A model generated the notes under the pieces. That model was not told where the DNA came from. It did not search any database and saw only the letters and a list, made by a program, of their open reading frames with translations. Of a stretch of DNA of 64,000 nt, positions 34,789 through 57,817 are shown in pieces. The DNA is taken from positions 258,634 through 322,633 of the IMG/VR virus record IMGVR_UViG_3300031576_000001, one strand, 5' to 3'. The translations under genes were made by a program, and so were the position numbers. The first letter of the stretch is position 1. Each line of letters opens with the position of its first letter.

Positions 34789-35378
34789 AACCTCTCAGCA
34801 GAGAGACTGGCGTAGGTCTGCCACGTAGAGCCCTCTTTTAGCTTTGGGCGGTGCTCACACCAGCCGAAAATCTCGAAACGGGCGCAGTCCTCGCTCATAC
34901 CGCAAGGGGGGTAGTACCAGCACACATCGCAAATCCTTGCACCCGCAGGCTCGGCTAGCTCGTGCGAATAATGGTGCAGGTTAGGGTGCGTCACTACCCC
35001 TGAGCACTCCTCACAAGGGCAAAAACAGCACGGCGAAGAGGGGGGTGCGTCCAGTAGCTCCCTCACGGGGGTGCGCAGTCGCCAAGCTGGCGTCTGTCCA
35101 GGGGGCTTGGGTACAAGGTAAGAGACCTCCCCGCTAAGCAAAGCCTCGCTTAGTTGCCTCGCGTCCGGCAAAGTGCTCGTGTAACCCGTGATTTCAAAGA
35201 GGCGCTCGTCGAAAGAGACCTCCCCGAGGTAGCGCGTCAAGCGTGAACCGTTGTCTTCAATCTCCGCGACTTCCTCCAGGGCTACCCTACCTTCGCCCAG
35301 GAAGTGAGCCACACGTCCCGTAGCCACAACCACGGAGAACCACCGCCCTTGGTAGTCTGCTAGCGTGCAGTCGGTCAC
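34779..35378 (-). CDS. Cys-rich hypothetical protein
   Basis: GTGA overlap with the upstream gene; CCFCPC and CDVC. Confidence 0.55.
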   Translation of the reverse strand: MTDCTLADYQGRWFSVVVATGRVAHFLGEGRVALEEVAEIEDNGSRLTRYLGEVSFDERLFEITGYTSTLPDARQLSEALLSGEVSYLVPKPPGQTPAWRLRTPVRELLDAPPSSPCCFCPCEECSGVVTHPNLHHYSHELAEPAGARICDVCWYYPPCGMSEDCARFEIFGWCEHRPKLKEGSTWQTYASLSAERFCQ

Positions 35379-37108
35379 GTTGCTTTCCCTTGCGGAGCCA
35401 AGAGATACCATTGACGGTGGTCGGTACGGTACCGGGCCACTTGCACAACACAGCGAGGTACGGATGGGTCCGTGTACACATCCCGTAGCCCCTTGTAGGT
35501 CTGGCGGTCAACGATCACCGAGCCCTCGTACCAAGTGTCACCTTGGTAGTGCTCCCTCGGAGGAGCCTTACGGATCGACAACAAGGGCAGGTTGCTGGGG
35601 TGTACGAAGAGGCAAAAGTGCCCCTCTAGGGCGAGAATCTCTTCCATTGTGTGTGCTGTACGCAACCCCATCAGGGACGAGCCATCAGGGACGAGCAGAC
35701 TTACAGCCCGATTAAGACCAGCACGGAGCGAACCCAGCGCCTCTTGCGCCACAGAAGCACGCTCGATGACCTCCTCTGCCGTGAGCGAGTCAAGGTCAGC
35801 GTACCACACAACCTCCCCAAGAGGGCTTTGCTCAGGCGCCTCCTCACTGTTGAAGGCTTTCTCTACAGCCTCGGTTACCAGAATAACCTCAGCGGGCTCT
35901 GTTTCGGTGACGGGGGGAGGGGGAACCGTACTGTCAATCTCAAGAGCCGCTGCTGGCGGTACCCACGGCTTCGTGCGATTCAGGAAGGCCGAGCGAAGAA
36001 CCGTGGTCTCCCCAAGGAAACGCTCACCCTCGTCAAAGAAGGAAAGCCTGAGCCTGGGGAGCCGCTTGGTACCTGCATAGCCCAGAACCTTGAACTTGAG
36101 CGCCGGACTGGACCAGCTTGACACACCCCCCACTGCGGGCAGCTTGGAGCCAGGCAGTAGGACGTGACGGGAGCCCACCTCGGGCTGAACCCCCTCAGCC
36201 GGCGCACCTCCCAAGAGGCGAGCACGGTGGATCTTCGCGGGTTGAACCCTCTCCGTGGACTTCAGGAATTCCTTCAAGGCCCAGGTGTCTTTCGCGGGCC
36301 TATGTTCGCCCGGCTTACCCCAGGTGACCGTACCCTCAACGTGCTTGTCGTTCACGACCCGTACCTTGATCCGAGGGCTCCCATAATCATCCCACGTTCC
36401 ACCGTCCACACAAGCCAGCTTGCGACCGGGCTTGAGCCGGTACACCGCACCCACCACAGGAGTGTCGGCGCCCTTGGGCTCGGGCTTTGCTTTGACAGAC
36501 ACGGCTGGTGCCTCTACCGGAGCGCTCTTGTCTTGGGTTGGGGTGCTGGGCAAAGCCTCTGGCTTGGCAGGCGCAGCCACAACACGCTCGGTCGTCTTCA
36601 AGAACTCGTCCAGGGTGATGCAGTCAATCCGGTCAGGACGGTCTACGCTCACCTTGACGAGGGGCGTTCCGTCCTTGAAGGTCTCCACCGCTAGCACGGT
36701 AAACTGGCTTAGGTAGCTCCAGTGCCCCGAGTAGTACCCTGACGCGGCGTGCGACCAACACTTATTCTCCCTCACAGCGTACTTCGCTCCCACTACCACC
36801 CCGTGCGTGTCCACTGGGTCAGCCTGCGCCTGCGGGGGAGAGGGAGAGGGTTTCTCAACCATGGTAGCCAGGAAGTTCTTGAGGGACACCCTGTCCATTT
36901 GAGTTACCATATCCTCTCCGGTAACTTCAACAGTGAGCACCGTCTCACCCACCGAGAGAACACGGAACCGTCGCCCGGTGTCAGACCACCACCCCCCGTC
37001 CAGCATCCTCAACTGGCAACCCTGCTCAATAGCCCACACAGAGCCTACCGAAGGTACCGCGGGCGTCCCCGTTGCCTGAGAAACCCCTTCACTCTCTTGC
37101 TTCTTCAT
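35375..37108 (-). CDS. repeat-domain protein (four ~70-aa units plus a C-terminal domain)
   Basis: Units VG..Y/W...F.VL.V...FL..T; paralogous to 37144. Confidence 0.75.
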   Translation of the reverse strand: MKKQESEGVSQATGTPAVPSVGSVWAIEQGCQLRMLDGGWWSDTGRRFRVLSVGETVLTVEVTGEDMVTQMDRVSLKNFLATMVEKPSPSPPQAQADPVDTHGVVVGAKYAVRENKCWSHAASGYYSGHWSYLSQFTVLAVETFKDGTPLVKVSVDRPDRIDCITLDEFLKTTERVVAAPAKPEALPSTPTQDKSAPVEAPAVSVKAKPEPKGADTPVVGAVYRLKPGRKLACVDGGTWDDYGSPRIKVRVVNDKHVEGTVTWGKPGEHRPAKDTWALKEFLKSTERVQPAKIHRARLLGGAPAEGVQPEVGSRHVLLPGSKLPAVGGVSSWSSPALKFKVLGYAGTKRLPRLRLSFFDEGERFLGETTVLRSAFLNRTKPWVPPAAALEIDSTVPPPPVTETEPAEVILVTEAVEKAFNSEEAPEQSPLGEVVWYADLDSLTAEEVIERASVAQEALGSLRAGLNRAVSLLVPDGSSLMGLRTAHTMEEILALEGHFCLFVHPSNLPLLSIRKAPPREHYQGDTWYEGSVIVDRQTYKGLRDVYTDPSVPRCVVQVARYRTDHRQWYLLAPQGKAT

Positions 37109-37143
37109 CGTATGACTCCTGGCGATAAACTACACCGTGACAC

Positions 37144-38469
37144 TCAACCTACCACAAAGAGACACCACCGACCACCCTGGTACTGCTCCGTAAACGTGTG
37201 CGTGACACCTACCACGGCTATCCTGGGGGGCAATCGCGCGTCCGTATGAACGTACACCCAAGAGCGCATTCCCTTGAGCCGATGCCTGCCCACAGACTTC
37301 CACTCCCGGGCTGCACCCGCAACCACCCCCCCCTGCTTCTCAAAACTGGGCGCCAAAGCCGTCCAGTCCACAGGGTTGAAGACTACATGACCCCCAGCAG
37401 CCCCCGTCAAGTTGATAACCTCAGAGACCGTATGCGTCCGCGTCATCAGGTCCAGCCCCCCTGACGTGGGTGACAAGAGACCCACAGCCTCTCGGTACGA
37501 CGCCTCAAGAGACTGCAAAGCCTCTCGGGCTACGCCGGCTTGCTGTACAACCTCCTCCCGCGTCATGAGCCCCACGTCGCGCCACCACGGACGAGGAGCA
37601 TCCACGCTAGGCGCCACACCCAGCGAAACCCAGCCCCTAGAGACCCCACAGGCCAGGGAGGTAGGCTCAGCTTTGACTACGGAACACTCAGAAGTCGGCT
37701 CAGCGTGAGGCACACCCTTGAGGAGGTCCATGTGGCGGCGCAAGTCCTCGACCAAAAACACGTCCTCATCTTGCCCACCCCTGCAGATTGACGGACCCAG
37801 GACCGTAACACGGACCAAAGGCGTGCCGTCTCGGTACACACCAAGACAAACCACCCGAAAACCATCGGGAATATCCCCGTCCCGCCACATACCCGAAAAC
37901 GTCTCGGATGATGAGTGTGACTGCACACCACACCCCTCCCTCACCACGTAAACCTCCCCAACACGAGGAAAAAGAAGCACCGTCTCACGCAAGAAGTGCT
38001 CCCCCTCGAAAAACACGGCGGTCGCCGCCCCACCCACCAGCACCATCACGCCAAGCAGACCCCCTCCCTCCGCAACCTCAAGAGCCATCACCACCCCCCC
38101 GGGGTACGGCTTCGTCCTACGTAGCACGCCCACCGTCGCAAGAAGCCTCTCCCGCAAAGAGACAACCTCCTCTTTCGGGCTGCCTTGCATAGGCTCATCG
38201 CCCACAGGGACCGTCAGGTGCAAAAAGTCCTCCCGCAACACAACGTCGTACTCCTCATCACCGCCAATCCTGCAGACCCGGAGATGCACCACGTCCACCC
38301 CCGTTTTGAGAGTGCCCACCCCCGCCACCGTGAACCGAGTAGACTCAGACCCCCACGAGCACTGCCTAGGAGTCTCAGGGGCGCTCCTCAACACGCCCAC
38401 AACTACCCCGTCAGCACCTAGCCTCAACCGGTACACGCCGCCTAGCACCACCTTAGCCTTCTCGCTCAT
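37144..38469 (-). CDS. repeat-domain protein, paralogue of 35375
   Basis: Shared units; WWRDVGLMTREEVVQQAGVAREAL vs WYADLDSLTAEEVIERASVAQEAL; GGTGTAAGGT 7 nt upstream. Confidence 0.7.
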   Translation of the reverse strand: MSEKAKVVLGGVYRLRLGADGVVVGVLRSAPETPRQCSWGSESTRFTVAGVGTLKTGVDVVHLRVCRIGGDEEYDVVLREDFLHLTVPVGDEPMQGSPKEEVVSLRERLLATVGVLRRTKPYPGGVVMALEVAEGGGLLGVMVLVGGAATAVFFEGEHFLRETVLLFPRVGEVYVVREGCGVQSHSSSETFSGMWRDGDIPDGFRVVCLGVYRDGTPLVRVTVLGPSICRGGQDEDVFLVEDLRRHMDLLKGVPHAEPTSECSVVKAEPTSLACGVSRGWVSLGVAPSVDAPRPWWRDVGLMTREEVVQQAGVAREALQSLEASYREAVGLLSPTSGGLDLMTRTHTVSEVINLTGAAGGHVVFNPVDWTALAPSFEKQGGVVAGAAREWKSVGRHRLKGMRSWVYVHTDARLPPRIAVVGVTHTFTEQYQGGRWCLFVVG

Positions 38470-38533
38470 ACCCCCCACCTTACACCAAGACCGAGAAGCC
38501 CCACGCCCCCGTAAGCACAAAGAAGCCTACCCC

Positions 38534-39301
38534 CTACGGAGAGGAGACCCCCAACAGCCACCGGGGCGTCCCTTCACCCAGCAACCTGGAGTCCCTTAGC
38601 TCACCCCTGGCAAGCTCAAGATACCGCGGAGACACTACGCCAGCAAGCGTAGCACGCTCACTCAAACATGGCGTGACACTCTCTCGGGTACCCTTCAAGA
38701 GAAAGTGCTCAAGTTGGGAGCGAGCCGAAGACACCTCACTCATCGAACGAAACCACGTACCACGTACACGCTCTACCCGATGTTTCCTCTCCGCACACGC
38801 CTTCTGGTACCGACTCACCGCCCACCCACACGCACCTACACCACCCACCAAGAACACAAGAGACAACCACCACACCGAAACCCACCACCCCACCAATGGC
38901 GCAACCCCCACCCCAAACAAGCCCGCCACGAACACCAACCACGAAAGCCCACCAAACCCCACAGGAGACGCCTCCAAGTCAGCCAACTCTAGCTCACACG
39001 CCCTCCCCACCAATGCCAACGCTACGCACTCCCTCTCTACGTGCAAAACAACCCGGGTAGACTCCCCCTCCGTCAGCACCGAAGCCTGTAGCCCACGCGC
39101 AAACTCGACTCGGAGACCCCTCTCCTCTCGCTTACGCCACTCCTCATGCTTCTTCGCAATAACCTCCTCACCCCTCTCCAGAAGCCACCTCTTCCACAAC
39201 CGCCTCCTCAAAGAAGCATACCCCTCCAGGCTCAACCCGTAACCCCTCGCCTCCCTCCGCTCCTTGACCGTCAACGCTGACACCTTCAACTTGACCGACA
39301 T
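38534..39301 (-). CDS. membrane protein (two TM helices)
   Basis: Hydrophobic LSWLVFVAGLFG and WWLSLVFLVGG segments; GGTGTA motif at 39313. Confidence 0.6.
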   Translation of the reverse strand: MSVKLKVSALTVKERREARGYGLSLEGYASLRRRLWKRWLLERGEEVIAKKHEEWRKREERGLRVEFARGLQASVLTEGESTRVVLHVERECVALALVGRACELELADLEASPVGFGGLSWLVFVAGLFGVGVAPLVGWWVSVWWLSLVFLVGGVGACGWAVSRYQKACAERKHRVERVRGTWFRSMSEVSSARSQLEHFLLKGTRESVTPCLSERATLAGVVSPRYLELARGELRDSRLLGEGTPRWLLGVSSP

Positions 39302-39417
39302 AACCAGCCCCTTACACCCTCCCCCCAAGAGAAAAGGCTGAGCCAAAAAAGCACCCTCCCTAACCTACGCCTCACCTCAGCCCCAGCCCCCAGCCTAAAG
39401 GGTGTATACCCACACCC

Positions 39418-40032
39418 GTGACACCAAGAGCCCTCCTCGACTGCGACGGAGTAGTCGCCAACTTCACCCACCACGTCGGGCACAGAGCCCACCAACTCGC
39501 TGGTCTGCCTACACCCACAGAGACACCTCCCTTCAAGAACTACAAATTCCTCCCCGAAGTCGCCGCCCTCACCGGTATACCCGAAGAGGAGGTCACCAAG
39601 GCGATCAGCTCCCCAGGCTTCTGCGAAACCATACCCCCCTTCCCAGGCGCTAGCGCCTTCGTTGACAACCTCAGCCAAACCCACGAAGTCATCATACTTA
39701 CCTCTCCCTGGTACTCACCCACATGGGTCAGCGAACGCTACGCCTGGCTCGCTAACCACCTCAATATACCCAGAAAAAATGTCATCTTCGCCCAACGAAA
39801 AGAACTCGTTCAGGGGGATATACTGATCGATGACCGCCTGATACACCTGACCCGATGGGTTTCAACTCAGTTGGCAGCCAATTCGCGAAAAGATTTCGCA
39901 GGGGTCTTGTATAACCCCACCCCCGCGGGAGTACCCCTCCCCACTCTGAAGGGTCTCTCCCTCTGTGCTACTTACAACGACATCTTGTCTGTAGCCAGGG
40001 CACAGGCAGGGGGGAGGGATTGGAACCTCTAA
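39418..40032 (+). CDS. HAD-family 5'(3')-deoxyribonucleotidase (NT5C-like)
   Basis: LLDCDGVVANF, ILTSP, K and GDILIDD motifs. Confidence 0.88.
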   Translation: MTPRALLDCDGVVANFTHHVGHRAHQLAGLPTPTETPPFKNYKFLPEVAALTGIPEEEVTKAISSPGFCETIPPFPGASAFVDNLSQTHEVIILTSPWYSPTWVSERYAWLANHLNIPRKNVIFAQRKELVQGDILIDDRLIHLTRWVSTQLAANSRKDFAGVLYNPTPAGVPLPTLKGLSLCATYNDILSVARAQAGGRDWNL

Positions 40033-40079
40033 ACCTAGCCTGACCCAATTGGGTGTGGAGTTAGGCTCTTCAACCCACC

Positions 40080-41114
40080 TCAGAGCTTCTTGCAGCCTGC
40101 GACGTACCACTGGCGAGCCGCGTCGGATACGGCTTTCTGAGCCGTTTTCGCGTCTAGCCCGGAACAAGCTAGCTCAGCGTTGCACTCCTTGAGCACGTCC
40201 GCCGTCAACCAAGCCAGAAAGACACCGGTTTTCTTGGGGTCGAAGCTACCCCCACAGACCACAGAAAGCCCCTGCTCCAGGCGGGCGCCCGTGACGACCA
40301 AAGAGGCGAAATCGGCGGCGTTTCGGGTTACCGTGGCGCTGGCTTGGGCTGGCGCCGTCCTGGTGACCGCGCAAGCGTGGTGCTTCTCGCCCTTGGCTTT
40401 GAAGCAGAGGTTGGAAAAGCGCTTATAATCGCTGCCCAGAGAGGGCTCGTCAGCCTCAGCCCCCGAGGGCACGGGGTAGAAGACCAGCCCTTCGCCCGTG
40501 CCCTCTACGCCAAAGGTGTTGCGTACCCAGGGGTCGCACTCCTCGACAGCGAGGACGTGCTGGTTGATCCGGTCTAGCGTGGGCTGTAGAGCTTCGTCGG
40601 AAGCCGCCCAGTTCACCATGTAGGCTTCGCCGTCCTGGTACCAGGGGAGCACGTAGCAGCCGGGGATGACCTGGGTCAGCCGGGAGAGGGTCTCTGGATC
40701 GTCGAGGAAGTCGATAACCCCAGGGTGGTCAACGAGGCGGGCAGCAAAGACGGCAAAGACCTTCGCTTTGAGGAGGTTGACGGCGACGCCCTTCTGAATG
40801 CCGGGTCCACACCACTCCCCGAAGAGGACCAGGGCGCCCGCCAGAGGAGCCAGCTTGGCTATCGTTGCCTGGCGCTCGTAGACCCACCTAGCAAAGCCCG
40901 CATTGTCCGAGTCCAGGGAGAGCACGCTGGTGCGGGACAGGGCAGTTACCCCCTCTTGGCTGATCTTTATGCCGGCGTTGGTGCCATGGAGCTTCACCTT
41001 GGCGCGGTAGCTCACGGTTGACGCCCCCTGGTCAAGAAGCTCCGGGTAGAGGGTCAGCTTGCGCCTGGCATTGTGAAAGTTGTCAATCTCGGTCCACTTG
41101 ACGTGCTCTGTCAT
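40080..41114 (-). CDS. RNA ligase, Rnl2 family
   Basis: KLHGTN (motif I), FGEWCGPGIQKG, GEGLVF, FKAKGEKH. Confidence 0.85.
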   Translation of the reverse strand: MTEHVKWTEIDNFHNARRKLTLYPELLDQGASTVSYRAKVKLHGTNAGIKISQEGVTALSRTSVLSLDSDNAGFARWVYERQATIAKLAPLAGALVLFGEWCGPGIQKGVAVNLLKAKVFAVFAARLVDHPGVIDFLDDPETLSRLTQVIPGCYVLPWYQDGEAYMVNWAASDEALQPTLDRINQHVLAVEECDPWVRNTFGVEGTGEGLVFYPVPSGAEADEPSLGSDYKRFSNLCFKAKGEKHHACAVTRTAPAQASATVTRNAADFASLVVTGARLEQGLSVVCGGSFDPKKTGVFLAWLTADVLKECNAELACSGLDAKTAQKAVSDAARQWYVAGCKKL

Positions 41115-41173
41115 GCCCGAGAGGGTACACCGCCCGGCGCTCAACCTCTCAGGGGGACCACCACCCCCTTTCA

Positions 41174-41216
41174 AAAACCCTCACGCTGATACGGCAAACC
41201 CAAAGAAATTGAAAGC
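41174..41216. repeat. 43-bp inverted repeat, left arm
   Basis: Reverse complement of 42113-42155 with 1 mismatch. Confidence 0.9.
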
Positions 41217-41870
41217 CAGGAGACCCTCTCGTCCGTGACGCGATGTGTCATGATGACCTCGGGGCACTCGGTACACAAAAGGCACGTTTGGGGTCGTGTT
41301 TTGTGCCTCGTGCCACCCCCCGGATTTACCGATGTTTTTGTGGTCCAGCCCCTAGGGGGAGACTCCATGCGGAGAGGGGTCCAAATTATGGAACCTCCAT
41401 ACACTTGATCGGCCTTTTTGCCAGGGGTCAGGAGTGACACCCCCTCTCTGCTCAATCGTGCTACGCCTAAGTGTGCTCAACTGGAGTCCTCGCCGGGGTC
41501 CAATTCGGATGTATTTCAAGAAACCCCGATCAATAGAGGGGTGTCATGTTTGACCTGAGAGGCGTGTCTAGGTAGCACGCATGACCCCCTACGCGCACAA
41601 TCGTGCCACGGTATGCCCTACGTGTAGGGTCATGTGTGGTCACGGTTGGCAGGGGGGGTGCGTCAATTTCTGAAGCTAGGAGGGGCTCATGCTGTGTGTG
41701 GAAGCTCCCACCTTGGGGGGCTTCTCTGCGCCTACGCTGGCGAGCCCCCTACCCCCTTGTGATTTGCGAATGCAGGAGGCGCCTCTTTGAGGCAAGGCGT
41801 AGCCCCAATTCATTTGGAAATTCGCGCCATTACCCTAGCCGGGTCTGCCCAGGGGCGGGAAGGGGTGAGT

Positions 41871-42049
41871 TCAGTACACACACAAATGAGGATCGGCTAG
41901 GAGCACCGGTATAGGATTTGAATTTTTTACCCGGTGCCCTGTCTCAGTACACACACAAATGAGGATCGGCTAGGAGCACCGGTATAGGATTTGAATTTTT
42001 TACCCGGTGCCCTGTCTCAGTACACACACAAATGAGGATCGGCTAGGAG
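41871..42049. repeat. 73-bp perfect tandem repeat (about 2.45 copies)
   Basis: Units start at 41871, 41944 and 42017. Confidence 0.95.
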
Positions 42050-42112
42050 GGTGGGGTGTGTTTTGAATTTTGGGTTGGAGGCTGTTTTCGATTACAGTGT
42101 GGCTGTAGCTGC

Positions 42113-42155
42113 GCTTTCAATTTCTTTGGGTTTGCCGTATCAGTGTGAGGGTTTT
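42113..42155. repeat. 43-bp inverted repeat, right arm
   Basis: Reverse complement of 41174-41216. Confidence 0.9.
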
Positions 42156-42305
42156 CGTGAGGGGGTTTCGGGTGAGACGGGGGGTCTCTATTTTCTACCC
42201 CGTTTTCTTTTTGGGTGGGTGTGGGGGTGGCTTCCTGAATTTTGGGTGGCAGAGAACGTAGCCTCGGGTGTTTTTTCTGCGAGGAGTGGTGTACCTAGTG
42301 TGCCC

Positions 42306-43133
42306 ATGGGATGTTTTCCTCTAGCGGGTCAAGACGAGTCCTTGAGCGGTCCTTACGTACCGTGTGTGTACGTGGCTTCCAGGCTACAGTACGCTTCCAT
42401 GTGGCGATCTTACCGAGAGGGTTGGGCTACGTCGGTAAGGGTGACCTCACGGTGGCTCGACGTAGTGGGCGAGGTGTCTGACAAGGGTGGGTTGTGGCAG
42501 GGCCTTATGGCGGACATAGTGAGGTCGGACGTTTTGCTAGCCTACGGGGAGGCTGGCGAGGTGTGGCAGGGTGCTCTTGTCGAGGTGGGCGCCGCCCTGG
42601 CTCTAGGTAAGCCAGTGCTTGTTGTGGGTGCAGGGGTGAACAGCTTTTGGAGTCACCCGTTGGTTACGCGCTTCGATACGGTAGAGGCTGCCATGGCTTC
42701 GCTTGGGGTACAGCGTCCCCTCTCACCTGCGCCTATTACGGAGTCTGTGAGGGTGATGGTGATGTCCGAGGTACGGCACGTTGGCATGTGGAGGGAGTGC
42801 GTAGCTTCTCAGCCTCCAGGGGTGAGCATAGTCTCTAGGTGGCTGGATGATGTGGCGGTGGGGGACACGGTACGGATGTGGCTTGAGTACCTGGAGGACA
42901 CGAAGCGCGCTCAAGCGGTCATTCTCTATGGTGGCTTTGATGATGACGCGCTATGGGAGCGCCAGCTAGTCAGGGTAGCGGTTCACGTAGCGCTGCTAGC
43001 CAAGAAGCCTGTCTACGTGGTGGGTTCTGGCTCGGGCTCAGAAAATCTAGGCATAGGGGCTTCGCCTCTTGTGCGTCTGTGTGCTTCGGTCGAGGAGGCT
43101 TTTCGGTTGGCTGCCGTTCTGTCTTCCCCTTAA
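42306..43133 (+). CDS. tandem nucleoside 2-deoxyribosyltransferase-like protein
   Basis: VYVAS...TSRW...DIVRSDVLL...GALVEVGAALALGKPV, followed by a degenerate second copy. Confidence 0.75.
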   Translation: MGCFPLAGQDESLSGPYVPCVYVASRLQYASMWRSYREGWATSVRVTSRWLDVVGEVSDKGGLWQGLMADIVRSDVLLAYGEAGEVWQGALVEVGAALALGKPVLVVGAGVNSFWSHPLVTRFDTVEAAMASLGVQRPLSPAPITESVRVMVMSEVRHVGMWRECVASQPPGVSIVSRWLDDVAVGDTVRMWLEYLEDTKRAQAVILYGGFDDDALWERQLVRVAVHVALLAKKPVYVVGSGSGSENLGIGASPLVRLCASVEEAFRLAAVLSSP

Positions 43134-43828
43134 AAGGAAGAACCCCGTAGCCCTTGGGGGTGCCTACGGGGCGCTCGATACCTCTTTGCGTAGAGGCTTG
43201 GTAAGCGAACGATGCTCCGAGAGCGGGGTCTCGTGGGTGTGGTCAGGGTGTATTTGTCACCGCCGCCTGTGGGGGGGCGGGGTGCGTTAGTATTGGTAGC
43301 CCTGTTGATGAGCGCCTGTAGAGCCGCTGTCGAGAGCACGTTACTTTTGGAGACGGGGCTGAGTGTGGTAGGCGTAGCCTTGTATAGGTCGGGGTTATTG
43401 AGGAACCCGTGACCGTCGAGGTCGCCGTCGAGACCAAAGAGGAAGTTGAGTGCAGTCGCCGCGAGAGATCCGCTACCCGTGAGGTTATTGCCGGTACCGA
43501 ACGTGCTCACCAAATTCAGTGGGCTCGTTAGCGTACCGCTCCCTGTTGTGGACCCTGTGTAAGCTAGGGCAAGATTAAGCCCTGTACCGTTGGCGAAGAG
43601 GGTGCCTATACCCGTGGCCGCGCCATTTGCGACGGCGACTAGGTTTAGGTTGACCGCTGTAACTGTGCCCACGCCGGTCGTATTGCCTATGTAGGCGAGG
43701 GCAAGGTTAAGGGGGGCTGACAGAGAACCAGCGCCCGTGGTGCTACCGGCGTAGGTAAGGTCTAGGTTCAAGAAAGCAGAGAGGTCACCATTACCATCTA
43801 GATTACCGTCAAGAAGTTGGTCAGCCAT
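43130..43828 (-). CDS. virion structural protein with G/T/N-rich repeats
   Basis: ~20-aa repeats NLALAY.G.TTG.G.L; CTTATCC motif upstream; in-frame TTA at 43202. Confidence 0.65.
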   Translation of the reverse strand: MADQLLDGNLDGNGDLSAFLNLDLTYAGSTTGAGSLSAPLNLALAYIGNTTGVGTVTAVNLNLVAVANGAATGIGTLFANGTGLNLALAYTGSTTGSGTLTSPLNLVSTFGTGNNLTGSGSLAATALNFLFGLDGDLDGHGFLNNPDLYKATPTTLSPVSKSNVLSTAALQALINRATNTNAPRPPTGGGDKYTLTTPTRPRSRSIVRLPSLYAKRYRAPRRHPQGLRGSSF

Positions 43829-43927
43829 GGGTCAGTACCGTGCGTGCCTCTCAGTGGGTAGCGTAGGGGATAAGAGGCAACCCTCAAAAGGGTTGCTCTG
43901 CTCTGCTCTGCGGTGTAAGGGGAAAGG

Positions 43928-44242
43928 GTGACAACCAAGAAGACGAAAACCACGGAAGCTCAGCGCACCCACGAAGAGGGGGAGTTTGGTACGATTGAAT
44001 GGCGTGCGCAGTTGGAGGGTTCTGCGTTGCACCACAATTGGCACGATCCCTTCGAGGTGATGCTACGCAGGTTGAATCAAGCCACCTCGACCCCCGCTTA
44101 CATCAAGGACTCTGCGATACACGTCCACGATACGCTTCTGCTCGCTCAGTCCATAGCCGTCTCCCTTTTCGGGTGGGACTGGAAAGAACACGTCATGGAC
44201 GTGTACGACCGTATCCAGAAGCACCTCTACCAAAGGGAGTAA
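43928..44242 (+). CDS. hypothetical protein
   Basis: GGTGTA motif at 43912; followed by a hairpin. Confidence 0.6.
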   Translation: MTTKKTKTTEAQRTHEEGEFGTIEWRAQLEGSALHHNWHDPFEVMLRRLNQATSTPAYIKDSAIHVHDTLLLAQSIAVSLFGWDWKEHVMDVYDRIQKHLYQRE

Positions 44243-44726
44243 CCCCTTGTAAGGGTACCCATGAAGAAAGCCCAGGAAGACTGTCTTCCTGGGCTTCTTC
44301 GCGCTTGGCTTGAAGAGGGGCTTCTCTTGGTAAGGTTTCCGAGGCGGTCAAGCTACTTGTCAAGAATTTGGCTACGTCACCGGAGAGCACGGTGCGGGGT
44401 GTGCCCAGCGAGGCGTAGTACAGAAGGTCTCCAGCTACAGCGGCGTTGTACACACCGAAGCCGTTCACGGTGCCCCAGTTGGCGGTTGCGGCGGGGAACG
44501 TCACGTCGGACACCGACGCAGAGCTTCCGGAGACGGGAGTGCCAAAGGTTGTGGACACGTCAACGCGAGCGTAGCTCCCACCAGAGACCTCGACACCACC
44601 CACGCCGCCAGCGCCCGGTGTGGTGGTAAAGAGTGCCATATGCACGCTGGTGGGCTGGGTGATTACGGAGCCTGGGATGAGCCAGAACTTGAGGGTATCG
44701 TTATCGGTAGCGTAGCTCTTGGGCAT
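44193..44726 (-). CDS. phage tail-fibre-associated structural protein
   Basis: ALFTTTP...EVSGGSYAR...FPAATANWGTV..FGVYNA..GDLL; from recall this family ends near LTASET, which is followed by TTA at 44331. Confidence 0.8.
   Translation of the reverse strand: MPKSYATDNDTLKFWLIPGSVITQPTSVHMALFTTTPGAGGVGGVEVSGGSYARVDVSTTFGTPVSGSSASVSDVTFPAATANWGTVNGFGVYNAAVAGDLLYYASLGTPRTVLSGDVAKFLTSSLTASETLPREAPLQAKREEAQEDSLPGLSSWVPLQGVTPFGRGASGYGRTRP
44263..44300. terminator. hairpin between convergent genes
   Basis: AAGCCCAGGAAGAC/GTCTTCCTGGGCTT perfect inverted repeat. Confidence 0.75.
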
Positions 44727-45407: not shown

Positions 45408-45812
45408 ATGGCCAGTACCGACAAGGAACCCCTCTCCGTGATGCAGTAAGCCCACCTCCAACGGATCAAAGGGAGGCGTCTCTCGGAGCGCACCCGACAC
45501 GGCAAGCAAGAGCGTAGTTTGCTCACCCGCAAGATGATCACGGTCGAGGGGGCGCTAGCCTCTGGGGTAAAGCTGACCCCTCTTGGTGAAGAGGCATTGC
45601 GTGAGCGTGAGGCTATCGAGGCGGGTAAGCTCCGGGTCCAGGGCACCACGTACCGTTACTTAGGTTTCACCACGCCTGACACTTCCACACAGAAAGGTTT
45701 GCAAGATGAAAGAGATCGCAATTTCCCTGTCGCGCGCCGAGCTACTCGCCGCGAAAGCCTGCTCGGCGGGCATGACGTGGTTCGATACGTGGCCCCGCCT
45801 CTACGACGGTGA
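45408..45812 (+). pseudogene. hypothetical gene with a premature TAA
   Basis: GGTGTACCTT 7 nt before ATG 45408; TAA at 45447 in frame with ORF 45519; TTA at 45660. Confidence 0.55.
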
Positions 45813-46119
45813 CCAAGAGATTGTCGTGCTGTGGTCGCCCCTGGCGATGGTGTGGTCCTTGGCGAACCCGAATAGCAACCAGCGCAGCATGGCCCGTTGG
45901 CTTATCGACAACGGGCTACTGCCCATGTGGTCGCTGAGCGGAGCCTACTTGAGCGGAGCCTACTTGAGCGGAGCCTACTTGAGCGGAGCCGACTTGAGCG
46001 GAGCCTACTTGAGCAGAGCCGACTTGAGCAGAGCCGACTTGAGCGGAGCCTACTACCCCGGGGGCGCCTTGCCGGGGGGGTGGGTGCGCAATAAGGACGG
46101 TTTCCTTGTTAGGGGCTAG
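45706..46119 (+). CDS. pentapeptide repeat protein
   Basis: About 8 near-perfect 15-bp repeats encoding LSGAY/LSGAD/LSRAD. Confidence 0.85.
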   Translation: MKEIAISLSRAELLAAKACSAGMTWFDTWPRLYDGDQEIVVLWSPLAMVWSLANPNSNQRSMARWLIDNGLLPMWSLSGAYLSGAYLSGAYLSGADLSGAYLSRADLSRADLSGAYYPGGALPGGWVRNKDGFLVRG

Positions 46120-49030: not shown

Positions 49031-49290
49031 GGTAACAATCTCTCGTGTTTGGGTGCCTGGCGGAAGGGGTACACCGAGAGAGCCACGGGGAGGACCACGC
49101 TTGCGGGGGAGCTAGAAGAAGGCTTTCATGGTGAGCGTAGGGTAACCAGGGTTAGAGGTTGGTACAAGGGGTGCGCCCTGCGGGAGTTGAACCCGCGCAA
49201 AAGAACTTTAGAGGCTCTGTACTCTACCTTTGAGTTAAAGGCGCGTTGTGTGGGCTTCTGCTCGATCTCACGAGGTAGCCCGTTGTGAAG

Positions 49291-56476: not shown

Positions 56477-57522
56477 GGTTGCTCTTTAGTCTCTCTAAGG
56501 TTGGTCAGGATAAGTAGTAAGATTCCCAAGAATACAAGTTTGCCTGCGGACCCTGCTGAGCCCGCTGTAGCGGAGCCTCCACCTGGGGCACCACCGGCAC
56601 CCCCGTTAGCGGTAGGCGCAGTCCCAGAGAAAAAGCGGTAGAGGACAATGCAATAGCCTCCTCCCCCTCCCCCTCCTCCAGCACCGTACTTGTTGTCCAC
56701 GGCGTTACCCCCACCATTGCCTCCGGCAGAGCCGTCAGCGTTGATGGTGCCACTGTTGACAACATTGTAGGCTACAAGGACAAGGACGCCGCCACAGGCA
56801 CCACCCCCACCGCCAAAGGTTGCGTTCTGTTCTGCTGTAAAGGAGCCACCGTAGCCCCCACCACCGCCGCCACTACCGCCACAAAGCGCCGTGGGGGTTC
56901 CAGGGGGACCACTGGCCAGACTTTGAAAGGTCGCGTGAACTAGCTCTGTTAGGGAGTAGCCTGGTTGGTGAGTAGGGGCGGTAACATTTCCTGCCGAGCC
57001 TCCTACCCCAGACCCCGAACCCACGCCTGTCCCTCCCGCCCCGCCCTTACCTCCCACGGAGTTTACACTGGACGCGCCAGAACCCCCGTTCGCCCCGCTG
57101 TGCGAGCCGCCCACCCCGCCGGCAGCCGTAACACCCATGACGGTTCCACTGTTGGTGGTAGCGCCGCCTTGTGGGATATTTGAGGCTGTGGACGCTTGGG
57201 TGGAGTCCCCCTTGCCGGCTGGGGTTGCAATAGCCCCATCTGTCGTACCGCCGCGAGCGTCTACCGTACCCCCAGAGGCGACCGTGAGGGTATTCTTGAC
57301 AAACACCCGGTAGCCCGCGACAGACAACCTACCCGTAGAGGTCACGGTCAGGTTGTTGTAGTACATATCCCGCGCAAGGACGACCGTAACAATCACGGTC
57401 ACGTCACCATCGCTTCCGTCCCCGAAGTACGCCATGATAGCGTTGCGTATCACGAGGGTATCCGTGGACGGAATCACCGTGAGCGTACCATTAATCATGG
57501 CGAGGGGAGAACAGTCAGGCAC
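56359..57522 (-). CDS. glycine-rich fibre/structural protein
   Basis: FGDGSDGDVT...YYNNLTV and GGGGGG runs; in-frame TTA at 56518 (proposed end). Confidence 0.75.
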   Translation of the reverse strand: MPDCSPLAMINGTLTVIPSTDTLVIRNAIMAYFGDGSDGDVTVIVTVVLARDMYYNNLTVTSTGRLSVAGYRVFVKNTLTVASGGTVDARGGTTDGAIATPAGKGDSTQASTASNIPQGGATTNSGTVMGVTAAGGVGGSHSGANGGSGASSVNSVGGKGGAGGTGVGSGSGVGGSAGNVTAPTHQPGYSLTELVHATFQSLASGPPGTPTALCGGSGGGGGGYGGSFTAEQNATFGGGGGACGGVLVLVAYNVVNSGTINADGSAGGNGGGNAVDNKYGAGGGGGGGGYCIVLYRFFSGTAPTANGGAGGAPGGGSATAGSAGSAGKLVFLGILLLILTNLRETKEQPCLTSPHSYLTLVYTSRLPLRTPWKQGSDLTVAQVVPLR

Positions 57523-57763
57523 CTGGAAGGGCCTCTAAGCTAGTGCGTAGAAAGCGAGGGTCCGCTTCCATGTGCCGTATGCACCGTGGGTCCGTAATGT
57601 CCGTACCAATGGGGGCACCCGCCACAAATGCAGTGAGCGGGGGCACCGGTAGGATCTCGATCACGCCGCCCGTGCTGGGGTGCAGTCGGATCTTGGTCAT
57701 GGGTCCGAGGCTGGTGCTCGGGTTGAAAACAGGAGAGGGACCGAGGTAAGTAAAATGTGCCAT
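57515..57763 (-). CDS. small structural-operon protein
   Basis: CTTATCC motif and AGGA upstream; in-frame TTA at 57536. Confidence 0.55.
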   Translation of the reverse strand: MAHFTYLGPSPVFNPSTSLGPMTKIRLHPSTGGVIEILPVPPLTAFVAGAPIGTDITDPRCIRHMEADPRFLRTSLEALPGA

Positions 57764-57817
57764 CCTGTCAACTTAGAGGGGGATAAGATGGCTCTCTTGA
57801 CGGAGTTACGGATCGGC

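What the first reader, a model, noticed from the sequence alone, without database searches (positions are those of the whole stretch)
41174..42155. ~1-kb non-coding element with 43-bp inverted repeats and 73-bp tandem repeats: candidate origin or packaging locus
The inverted-repeat arms are 41174-41216 and 42113-42155 (1 mismatch). Inside are 2.45 perfect 73-bp units, each full unit holding an AT-rich core (TAGGATTTGAATTTTT) flanked by GCACCGGTA/TACCCGGTGC. Divergent GGTGTA promoters flank the element, and the skew switches here. Alternatives are an invertible segment or a non-autonomous mobile element.
Basis: partly seen in the sequence, partly recalled or inferred. Interest (0 to 1): 0.65.

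Follow-up and report, generated by a model that had tools for sequence, protein, structure and literature searches.

The report
Huge-phage non-coding replication/packaging control region
A unique 1.2-kb gene-free stretch in an uncultivated cave phage of more than 320 kb, bounded by 54-bp inverted repeats and holding perfect 73-bp repeats, lies where the genome's strand composition flips most sharply and is about 1.7-fold over-represented in the sample, so it is most likely where DNA synthesis (or genome-end formation) starts, though no read-level, comparative or experimental evidence confirms this.

Summary
The inverted-repeat arms are 41163-41216 and 42113-42166 (50 of 54 nt; 31 nt perfect). 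A 73-bp unit is repeated 2.45 times at 100% identity, and GGTGTA motifs precede both divergent flanking genes. The gene-free gap is 41115-42305 and is closed under every single-stop reassignment. The window is the end of a 322.6-kb IMG/VR phage record from a cave metagenome. The element is single-copy, has no relative in any collection searched and matches no Rfam family.

Two new results point to DNA metabolism. First, the two most extreme strand-composition domains of the genome flank the locus. The bias shows at third codon positions, does not depend on gene orientation, decays with distance, and has origin-like polarity. Second, k-mer depth between the arms is 21-24, against 12.6-14.2 in the flanks.

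Transposition and site-specific inversion have little support: no target duplication, no other copy, and no recombinase in 322 kb.

Best reading (0.4) is a replication-start control region with twin outward-facing modules. The main rival (0.25) is a collapsed direct terminal repeat, that is, the packaging ends. Mapping the raw reads would decide between the two.

The parts
41115..42305 (.). Whole gene-free gap between the divergent RNA-ligase and NDT-like genes (1191 nt)
   Evidence: Start codons at 41114 (minus) and 42306 (plus) each follow GGTGTA by 17-18 nt. All six frames are closed under any single stop reassignment. Internal ORFs have negative or zero codon-usage scores. No Rfam match.
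41163..41216 (-). Left inverted-repeat arm; read outward (towards the ligase) it matches the right arm
   Evidence: 50/54 identity, perfect 31-mer at 41186-41216. Unique in the genome.
42113..42166 (+). Right inverted-repeat arm, read outward towards the NDT-like gene
   Evidence: The shared 31-mer has k-mer depth 43.
41217..41870 (.). Unique interior, non-coding, about 58% GC, no iterons
   Evidence: No repeated word of 10 nt or more on either strand. Depth 24 against 12.6-14.2 in the flanks.
41574..41640 (.). Imperfect 12-bp-stem hairpin; the only structured spot of the interior
   Evidence: Sliding-window z about -2.7 to -3.4; DNA fold -16.6 kcal/mol, z -1.7.
41871..42089 (+). 73-bp tandem array: two perfect units plus 33 nt (to 42049), then a degenerate remainder
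   Evidence: Lowest-GC part of the element (0.44-0.47, lowest 0.5-0.7% of genome windows). Depths 32.2 (two-copy k-mers) and 53.3 (three-copy k-mers).
41903..41937 (.). Unit hairpin 1 (about 10-bp stem with one bulge, AT-rich loop)
   Evidence: dG -8.4 kcal/mol, z -1.25, not significant on its own.
41976..42010 (.). Unit hairpin 2, identical to hairpin 1
42064..42249 (+). Same-orientation array of T-tract+GGGT sites (42064, 42119 in the arm, 42204, 42236), with one inverted copy in the left arm at 41198
   Evidence: TGAATTTT occurs 4 times on the + strand of the 322-kb record, all in the element (41919, 41992, 42064, 42236). The 12-mer TGAATTTTGGGT occurs twice.
42119..42268 (+). G-run cluster just outward of the right arm (10 runs of at least 3 G in 150 nt)
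   Evidence: Second highest in the genome, top 0.13% of windows.
41126..41131 (-). GGTGTA start-proximal motif of the RNA-ligase gene
42288..42293 (+). GGTGTA start-proximal motif of the NDT-like gene
40080..41114 (-). RNA ligase gene (Pfam RNA_ligase, E 2.7e-12); compositionally neutral, probably a later insertion between the element and the left skew domain
   Evidence: It is 41-54% identical to ligases of phages that share only 9-15 of 313 proteins with this one.
35375..40032 (.). Left skew domain: + strand C/A-rich whatever the gene orientation
   Evidence: + strand GC3 deviations -0.19, -0.42, -0.75, -0.45. 1.5-kb window z = -6.5.
42063..44726 (.). Right skew domain: + strand G/T-rich whatever the gene orientation
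   Evidence: + strand GC3 deviations +0.43, +0.40, +0.36. 1.5-kb window z = +4.6.

Best explanation
The gap is a cis-acting DNA-replication control region of the phage, where DNA synthesis starts and moves outward in both directions.

Inferred mechanism. The two arms are outward-facing copies of one roughly 50-bp module, either a binding or nicking site or a primer promoter. Each arm is followed on its outward strand by G-run-rich DNA, which favours a stable RNA:DNA or displaced-strand structure. Synthesis primed there displaces the parental strand of the same sense. That strand stays single-stranded longest close to the element, loses C and A, and so becomes G+T-rich. The 73-bp hairpin units and the element-specific T-tract+GGGT sites would be auxiliary protein-binding or easily opened DNA.

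What is shown: the anatomy, its uniqueness in the genome, the strand-asymmetry switch with its polarity and decay, and the excess depth. What is inferred: that replication causes the asymmetry, and what each part does.
For: (1) The strongest strand-composition step in the record is here: 0.43, against 0.18 for the next largest.
(2) Among 261 genes of at least 100 aa, the three highest coding-strand GC3 skews are genes transcribed away from the element. The three lowest are genes transcribed towards it. All six lie within 4 kb of it. So on the + strand the bias is negative for every gene at 35.4-40.0 kb and positive at 42.06-44.7 kb, whatever the orientation, and it decays with distance.
(3) Elsewhere, neighbouring genes of opposite orientation show no such correlation (r = 0.01, n = 64).
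(4) Polarity: the G+T-rich strand runs 5'->3' away from the element on both sides. This is the sign seen at bidirectional origins and in strand-displacement replication (established knowledge).
(5) The gap is non-coding and lies between divergent genes. It holds the best tandem repeat and the only long inverted repeat of the genome, an 8-mer found nowhere else on that strand, the second densest G-run cluster just outward of the right arm, and a locally low GC.
(6) Inter-arm k-mer depth is 21-24 against 12.6 and 14.2 in the flanks, and the shared 31-mer is at 43. Extra strands or copies made at a start site would fit this.
Against: There is no genome-wide V-shaped cumulative skew; the global minimum is near 180 kb.

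The asymmetric domains are only about 3-5 kb long, and the RNA-ligase gene between the left domain and the element is neutral. That has to be explained as a late insertion.

There are no classical iterons in the interior. No initiator, helicase or primase was recognised among the neighbouring genes scanned, which are mostly ORFans. No sigma-70-like promoter was found. The unit hairpin is not significantly stable.

A sharp 1-kb depth bump is not what a theta-type origin predicts. Depth comes from contig means of a single sample.

Another divergent gap (genome 4387-6265) holds the lowest-GC spot and an inverted-repeat-bounded short-repeat block, so it is a competing origin candidate.

No relatives exist to test conservation.
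Confidence: 0.4

Rival explanations
1. Collapsed direct terminal repeat. The roughly 1-kb arm-to-arm segment would be present at both ends of the packaged linear genome and assembled as one copy. The inverted arms would be two copies of an asymmetric terminase or nickase site that place staggered nicks on opposite strands. Fill-in synthesis between the nicks would duplicate the segment. The outward skew would come from recombination-primed synthesis starting at the repeats.
For: Depth between the arms is 1.6-1.8 times that of both flanks, and the shared 31-mer at 43 is close to 24 + 21. PhageTerm states that the region between DTR termini shows twice the average coverage, that assemblers output a single copy, and that DTRs arise by extension from staggered nicks (PMC5557969). 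The region is non-coding, repeat-rich, and has genes diverging from it, as at the ends of phage N4 (own knowledge). The element-specific motif array could be terminase-binding sites.
Against: No read-start data are available, and depth is one figure per contig, so the edges of the bump are unknown. No terminase was recognised in the record. As far as I know, known jumbo-phage terminal repeats are several kb to tens of kb long and coding, and many huge phages package by headful. Exposure of the 3'-ended strand at resected or unreplicated ends predicts the opposite skew polarity. Inverted repeats at DTR edges are not a known feature.
Confidence: 0.25
2. Only a regulatory spacer. It would be a long divergent-promoter region whose arms are duplicated operators or promoters, with no role in DNA replication or packaging. 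The skew would come from heavy outward read-through transcription, and the depth excess from noise or strain mixture.
For: Both flanking genes carry the genome-wide GGTGTA start-proximal motif. The arms face outward. G-rich non-template strands lie just outward of the arms. Transcription-associated deamination enriches G+T on the non-template strand (established knowledge).
Against: Genes transcribed towards the element carry the same + strand bias as their neighbours. The genome shows no general transcription-linked skew: mean coding-strand GC3 skew is -0.05. The ligase, the first gene of the leftward unit, is neutral. The 270-aa gene and the nucleotidase gene have their own GGTGTA sites at 39318 and 39401. 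This reading does not explain the 1.7-fold depth.
Confidence: 0.15
3. Non-autonomous mobile element (MITE-like) with 54-bp terminal inverted repeats, inserted between two genes.
For: Terminal inverted repeats around about 900 bp of non-coding DNA. The excess depth could mean copies elsewhere in the community.
Against: There is no target-site duplication at either plausible boundary (direct reading). There is no second copy in the 322-kb record, in IMG/VR, in JGI metagenome contigs including the source assembly, or in 185,579 species genomes. No transposase or recombinase was found. It does not explain the flanking skew domains.
Confidence: 0.06
4. Invertible DNA segment (phase-variable switch) that flips between the arms.
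For: An inverted repeat flanking about 900 bp between divergent genes. The 31-bp perfect core could allow homologous flip-flop.
Against: No Resolvase or Phage_integrase family gene in 322 kb. Both flanking genes have their own start-proximal motif outside the arms. No promoter-like site was found inside. Inversion changes no k=31 word, so can neither show it nor explain the depth.
Confidence: 0.04
5. Gene for a large non-coding RNA whose ends pair through the arms (a long closing stem, as in rRNA precursors cut by RNase III).
For: The minimum-free-energy fold pairs the arms. There are two locally structured spots.
Against: No Rfam family at E <= 10 apart from one chance-level snoRNA hit. Most windows have ordinary z-scores. 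No promoter motif is placed to transcribe across the arms. There are no homologues to test covariation.
Confidence: 0.05
6. Assembly artefact: a mis-joined or mis-counted repeat.
For: The unit number cannot be spanned by short reads. Depths imply about 1.4-1.5 full units.
Against: An independent k=31 assembly reproduces every base of 39300-44300 with no other letters, joints or loose ends. The perfect core of the arms is only 31 nt, which 150-nt reads span easily.
Confidence: 0.03

Closest known systems
Promoter-primed phage origins (T4 oriF/oriG R-loop origins; T7 primary origin with phi1.1A/B promoters)
   Same: A short non-coding or promoter-linked region where a transcript or opened duplex primes leading-strand synthesis, with G-rich or easily opened DNA downstream. 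Origin-like polarity of strand bias.
   Different: Here two identical modules face outward about 950 bp apart. No promoter is demonstrated in the arms. No homology exists. The T4 and T7 origins are not bounded by inverted repeats (own knowledge).
Vertebrate mitochondrial control region (D-loop)
   Same: About 1 kb non-coding with divergent transcription. G-run blocks next to the start. Tandem repeats with variable copy number in many species. A persistent extra strand that raises local depth. Strong strand asymmetry at third codon positions that grades with time spent single-stranded (established knowledge). All of these have counterparts here.
   Different: This is an analogy of mechanism only. 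The replicon and enzymes are unrelated, the asymmetry here is local (3-5 kb) and two-sided, and no third strand is shown.
Direct terminal repeats of T7-, N4- and T5-type phages
   Same: Expected two-fold read depth of a single assembled copy. Short T7- and N4-type repeats are non-coding. The repeat lies between the two genome ends.
   Different: No termini are mapped and no terminase was found. Inverted repeats at the edges are not a known feature.
Iteron-type origins (lambda ori, P1 oriR, P4 ori/crr)
   Same: Repeated protein-binding-like motifs plus a lower-GC stretch. P4 crr has long (about 120-bp) direct repeats carrying short sites (own knowledge).
   Different: There is no array of 17-22-bp iterons, no adjacent initiator gene, and only 2-3 long units.
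MITEs and invertons (fimS-type or Hin/Gin-type switches)
   Same: An inverted repeat bounding a short non-coding segment.
   Different: No target duplication, no other copies, no recombinase.

Membership tests
Iteron-type replication origin | Array of at least 3-4 direct repeats of about 17-22 bp | tested here: not met
   No repeated word of 10 nt or more in 41217-41870. There are only two and a half 73-bp units and a loose array of 4-5 T-tract+GGGT sites.
Iteron-type replication origin | Adjacent AT-rich unwinding element | tested here: inconclusive
   The tandem region has GC 0.44-0.47, in the lowest 0.5-0.7% of windows, but at least 12 places in the genome are lower.
Iteron-type replication origin | Initiator gene in cis | tested here: not met
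   The neighbours are an RNA ligase, an NDT-like gene, NT5C, NUDIX and ORFans.
Replication origin (any type) | Strand-composition polarity switch with the G+T-rich strand running outward | tested here: met
   Largest step in the genome, orientation-independent, visible at third codon positions. It is local, not genome-wide.
Replication origin (any type) | Initiation mapped physically (marker frequency, bubble arcs, autonomous replication) | not testable with these tools
   Only contig-level depth from one sample is available.
Direct terminal repeat / fixed packaging ends | Two-fold read depth over the repeat | tested here: inconclusive
   Depth is 1.6-1.8 times the flanks, but these are contig means, so the edges are unknown.
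Direct terminal repeat / fixed packaging ends | Read-start peaks, forward at the left edge and reverse at the right edge | not testable with these tools
   The runs are kept as contigs only, and no starts or ends are listed.
Direct terminal repeat / fixed packaging ends | Terminase gene of a DTR-type clade | tested here: inconclusive
   No match to Terminase_6N, TerL_ATPase, Terminase_6C or Terminase_3. The record is about 68% complete.
MITE / TIR transposon | Terminal inverted repeats | tested here: met
   54-nt arms, 93% complementary.
MITE / TIR transposon | Target-site duplication | tested here: not met
   The flanks outside 41163/42166 and outside 41174/42155 share no direct repeat.
MITE / TIR transposon | Multiple dispersed copies | tested here: not met
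   only the source contig holds the arm.
Inverton / invertible segment | Site-specific recombinase encoded nearby | tested here: not met
   No Resolvase or Phage_integrase match in 322 kb.
Inverton / invertible segment | Both orientations present in reads | not testable with these tools
   Inversion within a 31-nt perfect core creates no new 31-mer.
Known structured RNA families (Rfam 15) | Covariance-model match | tested here: not met
   Nothing at gathering score. At E <= 10 there is only one 14.7-bit snoRNA hit.

The most novel reading that the evidence does not exclude
A phage 'control region' that works like the mitochondrial D-loop. Twin inverted promoter or R-loop modules would prime outward strand-displacement synthesis. 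That would leave a persistent extra strand, seen as the roughly 1.7-fold depth. It would also expose the displaced strands for a few kb on each side long enough to imprint the most extreme, orientation-independent mutational asymmetry of the genome.
Probability: 0.15. Interest if true: 0.75.

Novelty: new variant of a known kind. Interest (0 to 1): 0.5.

Why it matters
Replication origins and genome ends of huge phages are almost entirely unmapped, and they are usually guessed from genome-wide GC skew, which about 40% of such genomes lack (PMC7162821). This case shows that a short-range strand asymmetry, independent of gene orientation and read at third codon positions, can point to a candidate start site where the genome-wide curve is flat. 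Local depth gives a second line of evidence. If confirmed, the twin inverted modules, G-run zones and hairpin repeats would define a new origin or end architecture. They would also give a sequence-only way to find such sites in other uncultivated phages.

Tried and rejected
- Rfam, at gathering and permissive thresholds, found nothing.
- blastn of the element against 50,697 phage records gave no match.
- Exact-pattern scans with the hairpin and with arm words returned only the source contig. These covered IMG/VR, JGI metagenome contigs and GTDB species genomes.
- Loci around 31 RNA-ligase relatives are not syntenic and share no similarity with the element by blastn or nhmmer.
- The NDT-like protein and a 402-aa neighbour have no relatives in IMG/VR.
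- Three 'relative' genomes were fetched whole. They share only 9-15 of 313 proteins, so they are useless for conservation of the element.
- Alternative genetic codes: no frame opens, and TAG is an ordinary stop despite a CUA-anticodon tRNA.
- Internal ORFs of 94 and 103 aa have codon scores of about zero or below, and I did not pursue a 33-aa ORF behind an AGGAGG.
- Larger hidden inverted duplication of the flanks: none by tblastx or blastn.
- Sigma-70-type promoters: none.
- Unit and arm hairpins are not more stable than shuffles.
- A paralogue comparison (577-aa against 441-aa genes) to polarise the substitution bias was too diverged to be informative.
- The look-up of encoding contigs for the ligase returned nothing on record.
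- Read laying was given 5,001 letters.

Full report
Context. The window is the last 64 kb of a 322,633-bp IMG/VR virus record (Ga0247727_10000022). The record is classed 'linear' with a CheckV completeness of 68%. Its reads come from a cave metagenome. It is a tailed phage: Gp80-like fibre and tail-fibre PHROG hits. GC is 59%. It carries 38 tRNA genes at 21-31 kb plus one CUA-anticodon tRNA in the window. Most neighbouring genes are ORFans.

Observation. All stated features are present.
- The arms extend to 54 nt (41163-41216 / 42113-42166, 50/54). The perfect core is 31 nt. Shuffles reach at most 17 nt.
- The 73-bp unit is repeated 2.45 times at 100% identity (41871-42049). This is the best tandem repeat of the whole record, and a degenerate third unit runs to 42089.
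- Each full unit holds a hairpin with a roughly 10-bp stem and an AT-rich loop (41903-41937, 41976-42010). Its stability is not above that of shuffles.
- The gene-free gap is 41115-42305. The RNA-ligase gene starts at 41114 on the minus strand. The NDT-like gene starts at 42306, not at the upstream GTG. Evidence for that start: GGTGTA lies 18 nt upstream, and the upstream extension has GC3 of 0.45 against 0.63 in the gene body.
- No frame opens under any single-stop reassignment, and TAG is a normal stop.

GGTGTA. The hexamer, often followed by nnnT, lies 15-20 nt (mostly 16-19) before the ATG of 53 ORFs. There is no Shine-Dalgarno sequence between it and the ATG, and no upstream -35-like conservation. 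Other genes have GGAG/GAGG at -8 to -12. That reading is an inference.

Uniqueness. Neither the arms nor the unit recur in the genome. The element has no match in 50,697 phage records, in IMG/VR, in JGI metagenome contigs other than its own, or in 185,579 species genomes. Phages sharing the ligase (41-54% identity) are not syntenic. They share only 9-15 of 313 proteins with this phage. Conservation and covariation therefore cannot be tested.

Strand asymmetry.
- Genome-wide cumulative GC skew is noisy, with its minimum near 180 kb.
- Locally, the two most extreme 1.5-kb windows of the record flank this locus: G+T excess z = -6.5 at about 37.9-39.4 kb and z = +4.6 at about 41.9-43.4 kb. The largest step (0.43, next 0.18) lies at about 40.3 kb.
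- At third codon positions, the 261 genes of at least 100 aa have a coding-strand GC skew of -0.05 +/- 0.14.
- The three highest values are 38534-39346(-) at +0.70, the NDT-like gene(+) at +0.38 and 37144-38469(-) at +0.37. All three are transcribed away from the element.
- The three lowest are 39418-40032(+) at -0.50, 43130-43828(-) at -0.45 and 44193-44726(-) at -0.41. All three are transcribed towards it.
- Expressed on the + strand, the deviation is therefore negative for every gene from 35.4 to 40.0 kb and positive from 42.06 to 44.7 kb, and it decays with distance.
- Outside the locus, neighbouring genes of opposite orientation show no such correlation (r = 0.01, n = 64).

This is a position-dependent mutational bias, not a coding-strand effect. 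The G+T-rich strand runs 5'->3' away from the element, as leading or displaced strands do at an origin (established knowledge). The ligase gene between the left domain and the element is neutral. It is also the one gene here that is widely shared among otherwise unrelated huge phages. A late insertion would fit both facts, but that is an inference.

Depth. Only Logan contigs exist for the two runs, which come from one sample that is probably the source. The contigs reproduce 39300-44300 exactly and break, as expected, at the shared 31-mer and at the array.

| Piece | Mean k-mer depth |
|---|---|
| Left flank (49-kb contig) | 12.6 |
| Right flank (3.9-kb contig) | 14.2 |
| Interior, 41187-41900 | 24 |
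| Interior, 42020-42142 | 21 |
| Shared 31-mer | 43 |
| k-mers present twice in the assembly | 32.2 |
| k-mers present three times | 53.3 |

The inter-arm DNA is thus about 1.6-1.8 times as abundant as its flanks, and the mean number of full units is nearer 1.4-1.5 than 2. Depth is one figure per contig, so the edges of the bump are unknown. Inversion cannot be seen at k = 31. GC bias cannot explain the 58%-GC interior.

Other anatomy.
- There are no iterons in the interior.
- TGAATTTT occurs four times on the + strand of the whole record, and all four lie in the element. A 12-mer extension occurs twice. Related T-tract+GGGT sites lie in both arms and at 42204.
- The 150 nt starting in the right arm hold 10 G-runs, the second highest count in the genome.
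- The tandem region is in the lowest 0.5-0.7% of windows for GC, but it is not the lowest.
- No sigma-70-like promoter was found. There is no Rfam family, and overall RNA structure is ordinary.

Interpretation. A mobile element is unlikely: no target duplication and no other copy. So is a site-specific inverton: no recombinase in 322 kb, and both flanking genes keep their own start signals outside the arms. A purely regulatory spacer explains neither the bias of the inward-transcribed genes nor the depth.

Two DNA-metabolic readings remain.
(a) An origin-type start region with twin outward modules (0.4). It explains the polarity, the decay, the G-run zones and the motif array. It needs an extra assumption for the sharp depth bump, such as persistent or abortive nascent strands as at the mitochondrial D-loop.
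(b) A collapsed direct terminal repeat (0.25). It predicts about two-fold depth and a single assembled copy. Inverted copies of an asymmetric nicking site would explain the arms. It needs recombination-primed synthesis from the repeats to give the observed polarity, and it has no terminase or terminus data behind it.

A second divergent gap at genome 4387-6265 holds the lowest-GC spot and an A-rich short-repeat block bounded by a 31-nt inverted repeat. It shows only a weak skew step. It could be another origin-like site or a small gene, and it tempers any claim that this element is 'the' origin.

Comparison with known systems. Functionally the nearest are promoter-primed phage origins (T4 oriF/oriG, T7) and, by analogy, the mitochondrial control region. 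The alternative is the terminal repeats of T7- and N4-type phages. Membership in iteron-type origins, MITEs, invertons or any Rfam family fails at one or more defining features (see the membership table).

Verdict. I class the element as a new variant of a known kind (a phage replication or packaging control region). Interest is moderate (0.5), because the decisive test, mapping of raw reads, was not available here.

Noticed in passing
genome-wide; in the window e.g. 2426(-), 5820(-), 7717(-), 18506(-), 18877(+), 25086(+), 28880(+), 30165(+), 39318(-), 39401(+), 43912(+): GGTGTA(nnnT) lies 15-20 nt (mostly 16-19) before the start codon of 53 ORFs, with no Shine-Dalgarno sequence and no -35-like element. 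It is probably a compact phage promoter or leaderless-type start signal. The remaining genes use GGAG/GAGG at -8 to -12.
   Followed up: partly
window 49170-49244 (-); genome 21209-31256: A tRNA with a CUA (amber-reading) anticodon, called tRNA-Pyl by ARAGORN, lies in the window, and 38 ordinary tRNA genes cluster at 21-31 kb. TAG still ends 71 of 313 predicted genes, so there is no sign of recoding.
   Followed up: partly
genome 4387-6265 (L037 588-2466), outside the window: A second long divergent gap contains the lowest-GC spot of the genome. It holds an A-rich block of short repeats about 21 nt apart, bounded by a 31-nt inverted repeat (L037 1137-1167 / 1464-1494). This could be another origin-like site, or a small hydrophobic or low-complexity gene without a clear start. 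No Rfam hit.
   Followed up: partly
genome 2149-2317, 126022-126170, 145857-146028, 163025-163190, 182724-182883, 244931-245096: A dispersed repeat family of about 70-170 nt with six copies in both orientations, 82-98% identical. Its nature is unknown.
   Followed up: no
window 35375-37108 and 37144-38469 (both -): The adjacent 577-aa and 441-aa ORFan genes are paralogues (two blocks, 40-42% identity). The copy nearer the element is much more G/T-skewed.
   Followed up: partly
window 45935-46054, inside ORF 45706-46119: A 15-nt unit repeated 8 times (94%) encodes SGAYL-type pentapeptide repeats. The Logan contig to the right of the element ends here.
   Followed up: no
window 40080-41114 (-): The RNA ligase is 41-54% identical to ligases in huge-phage contigs that otherwise share only 9-15 of 313 proteins with this phage. 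The gene appears to move horizontally among huge phages.
   Followed up: partly
window 44263-44300: A 38-nt near-perfect palindrome (92%) lies in the overlap of ORFs 43928-44242 / 44193-44726.
   Followed up: no
genome 167994-170096 (L038) and window 56477-57817: Two further stretches of 1.3-2.1 kb were not called as coding by my codon-usage gene finder. L038 has no Rfam hit and no notable repeats. The window stretch contains a 387-aa ORF with a poor codon score.
   Followed up: no
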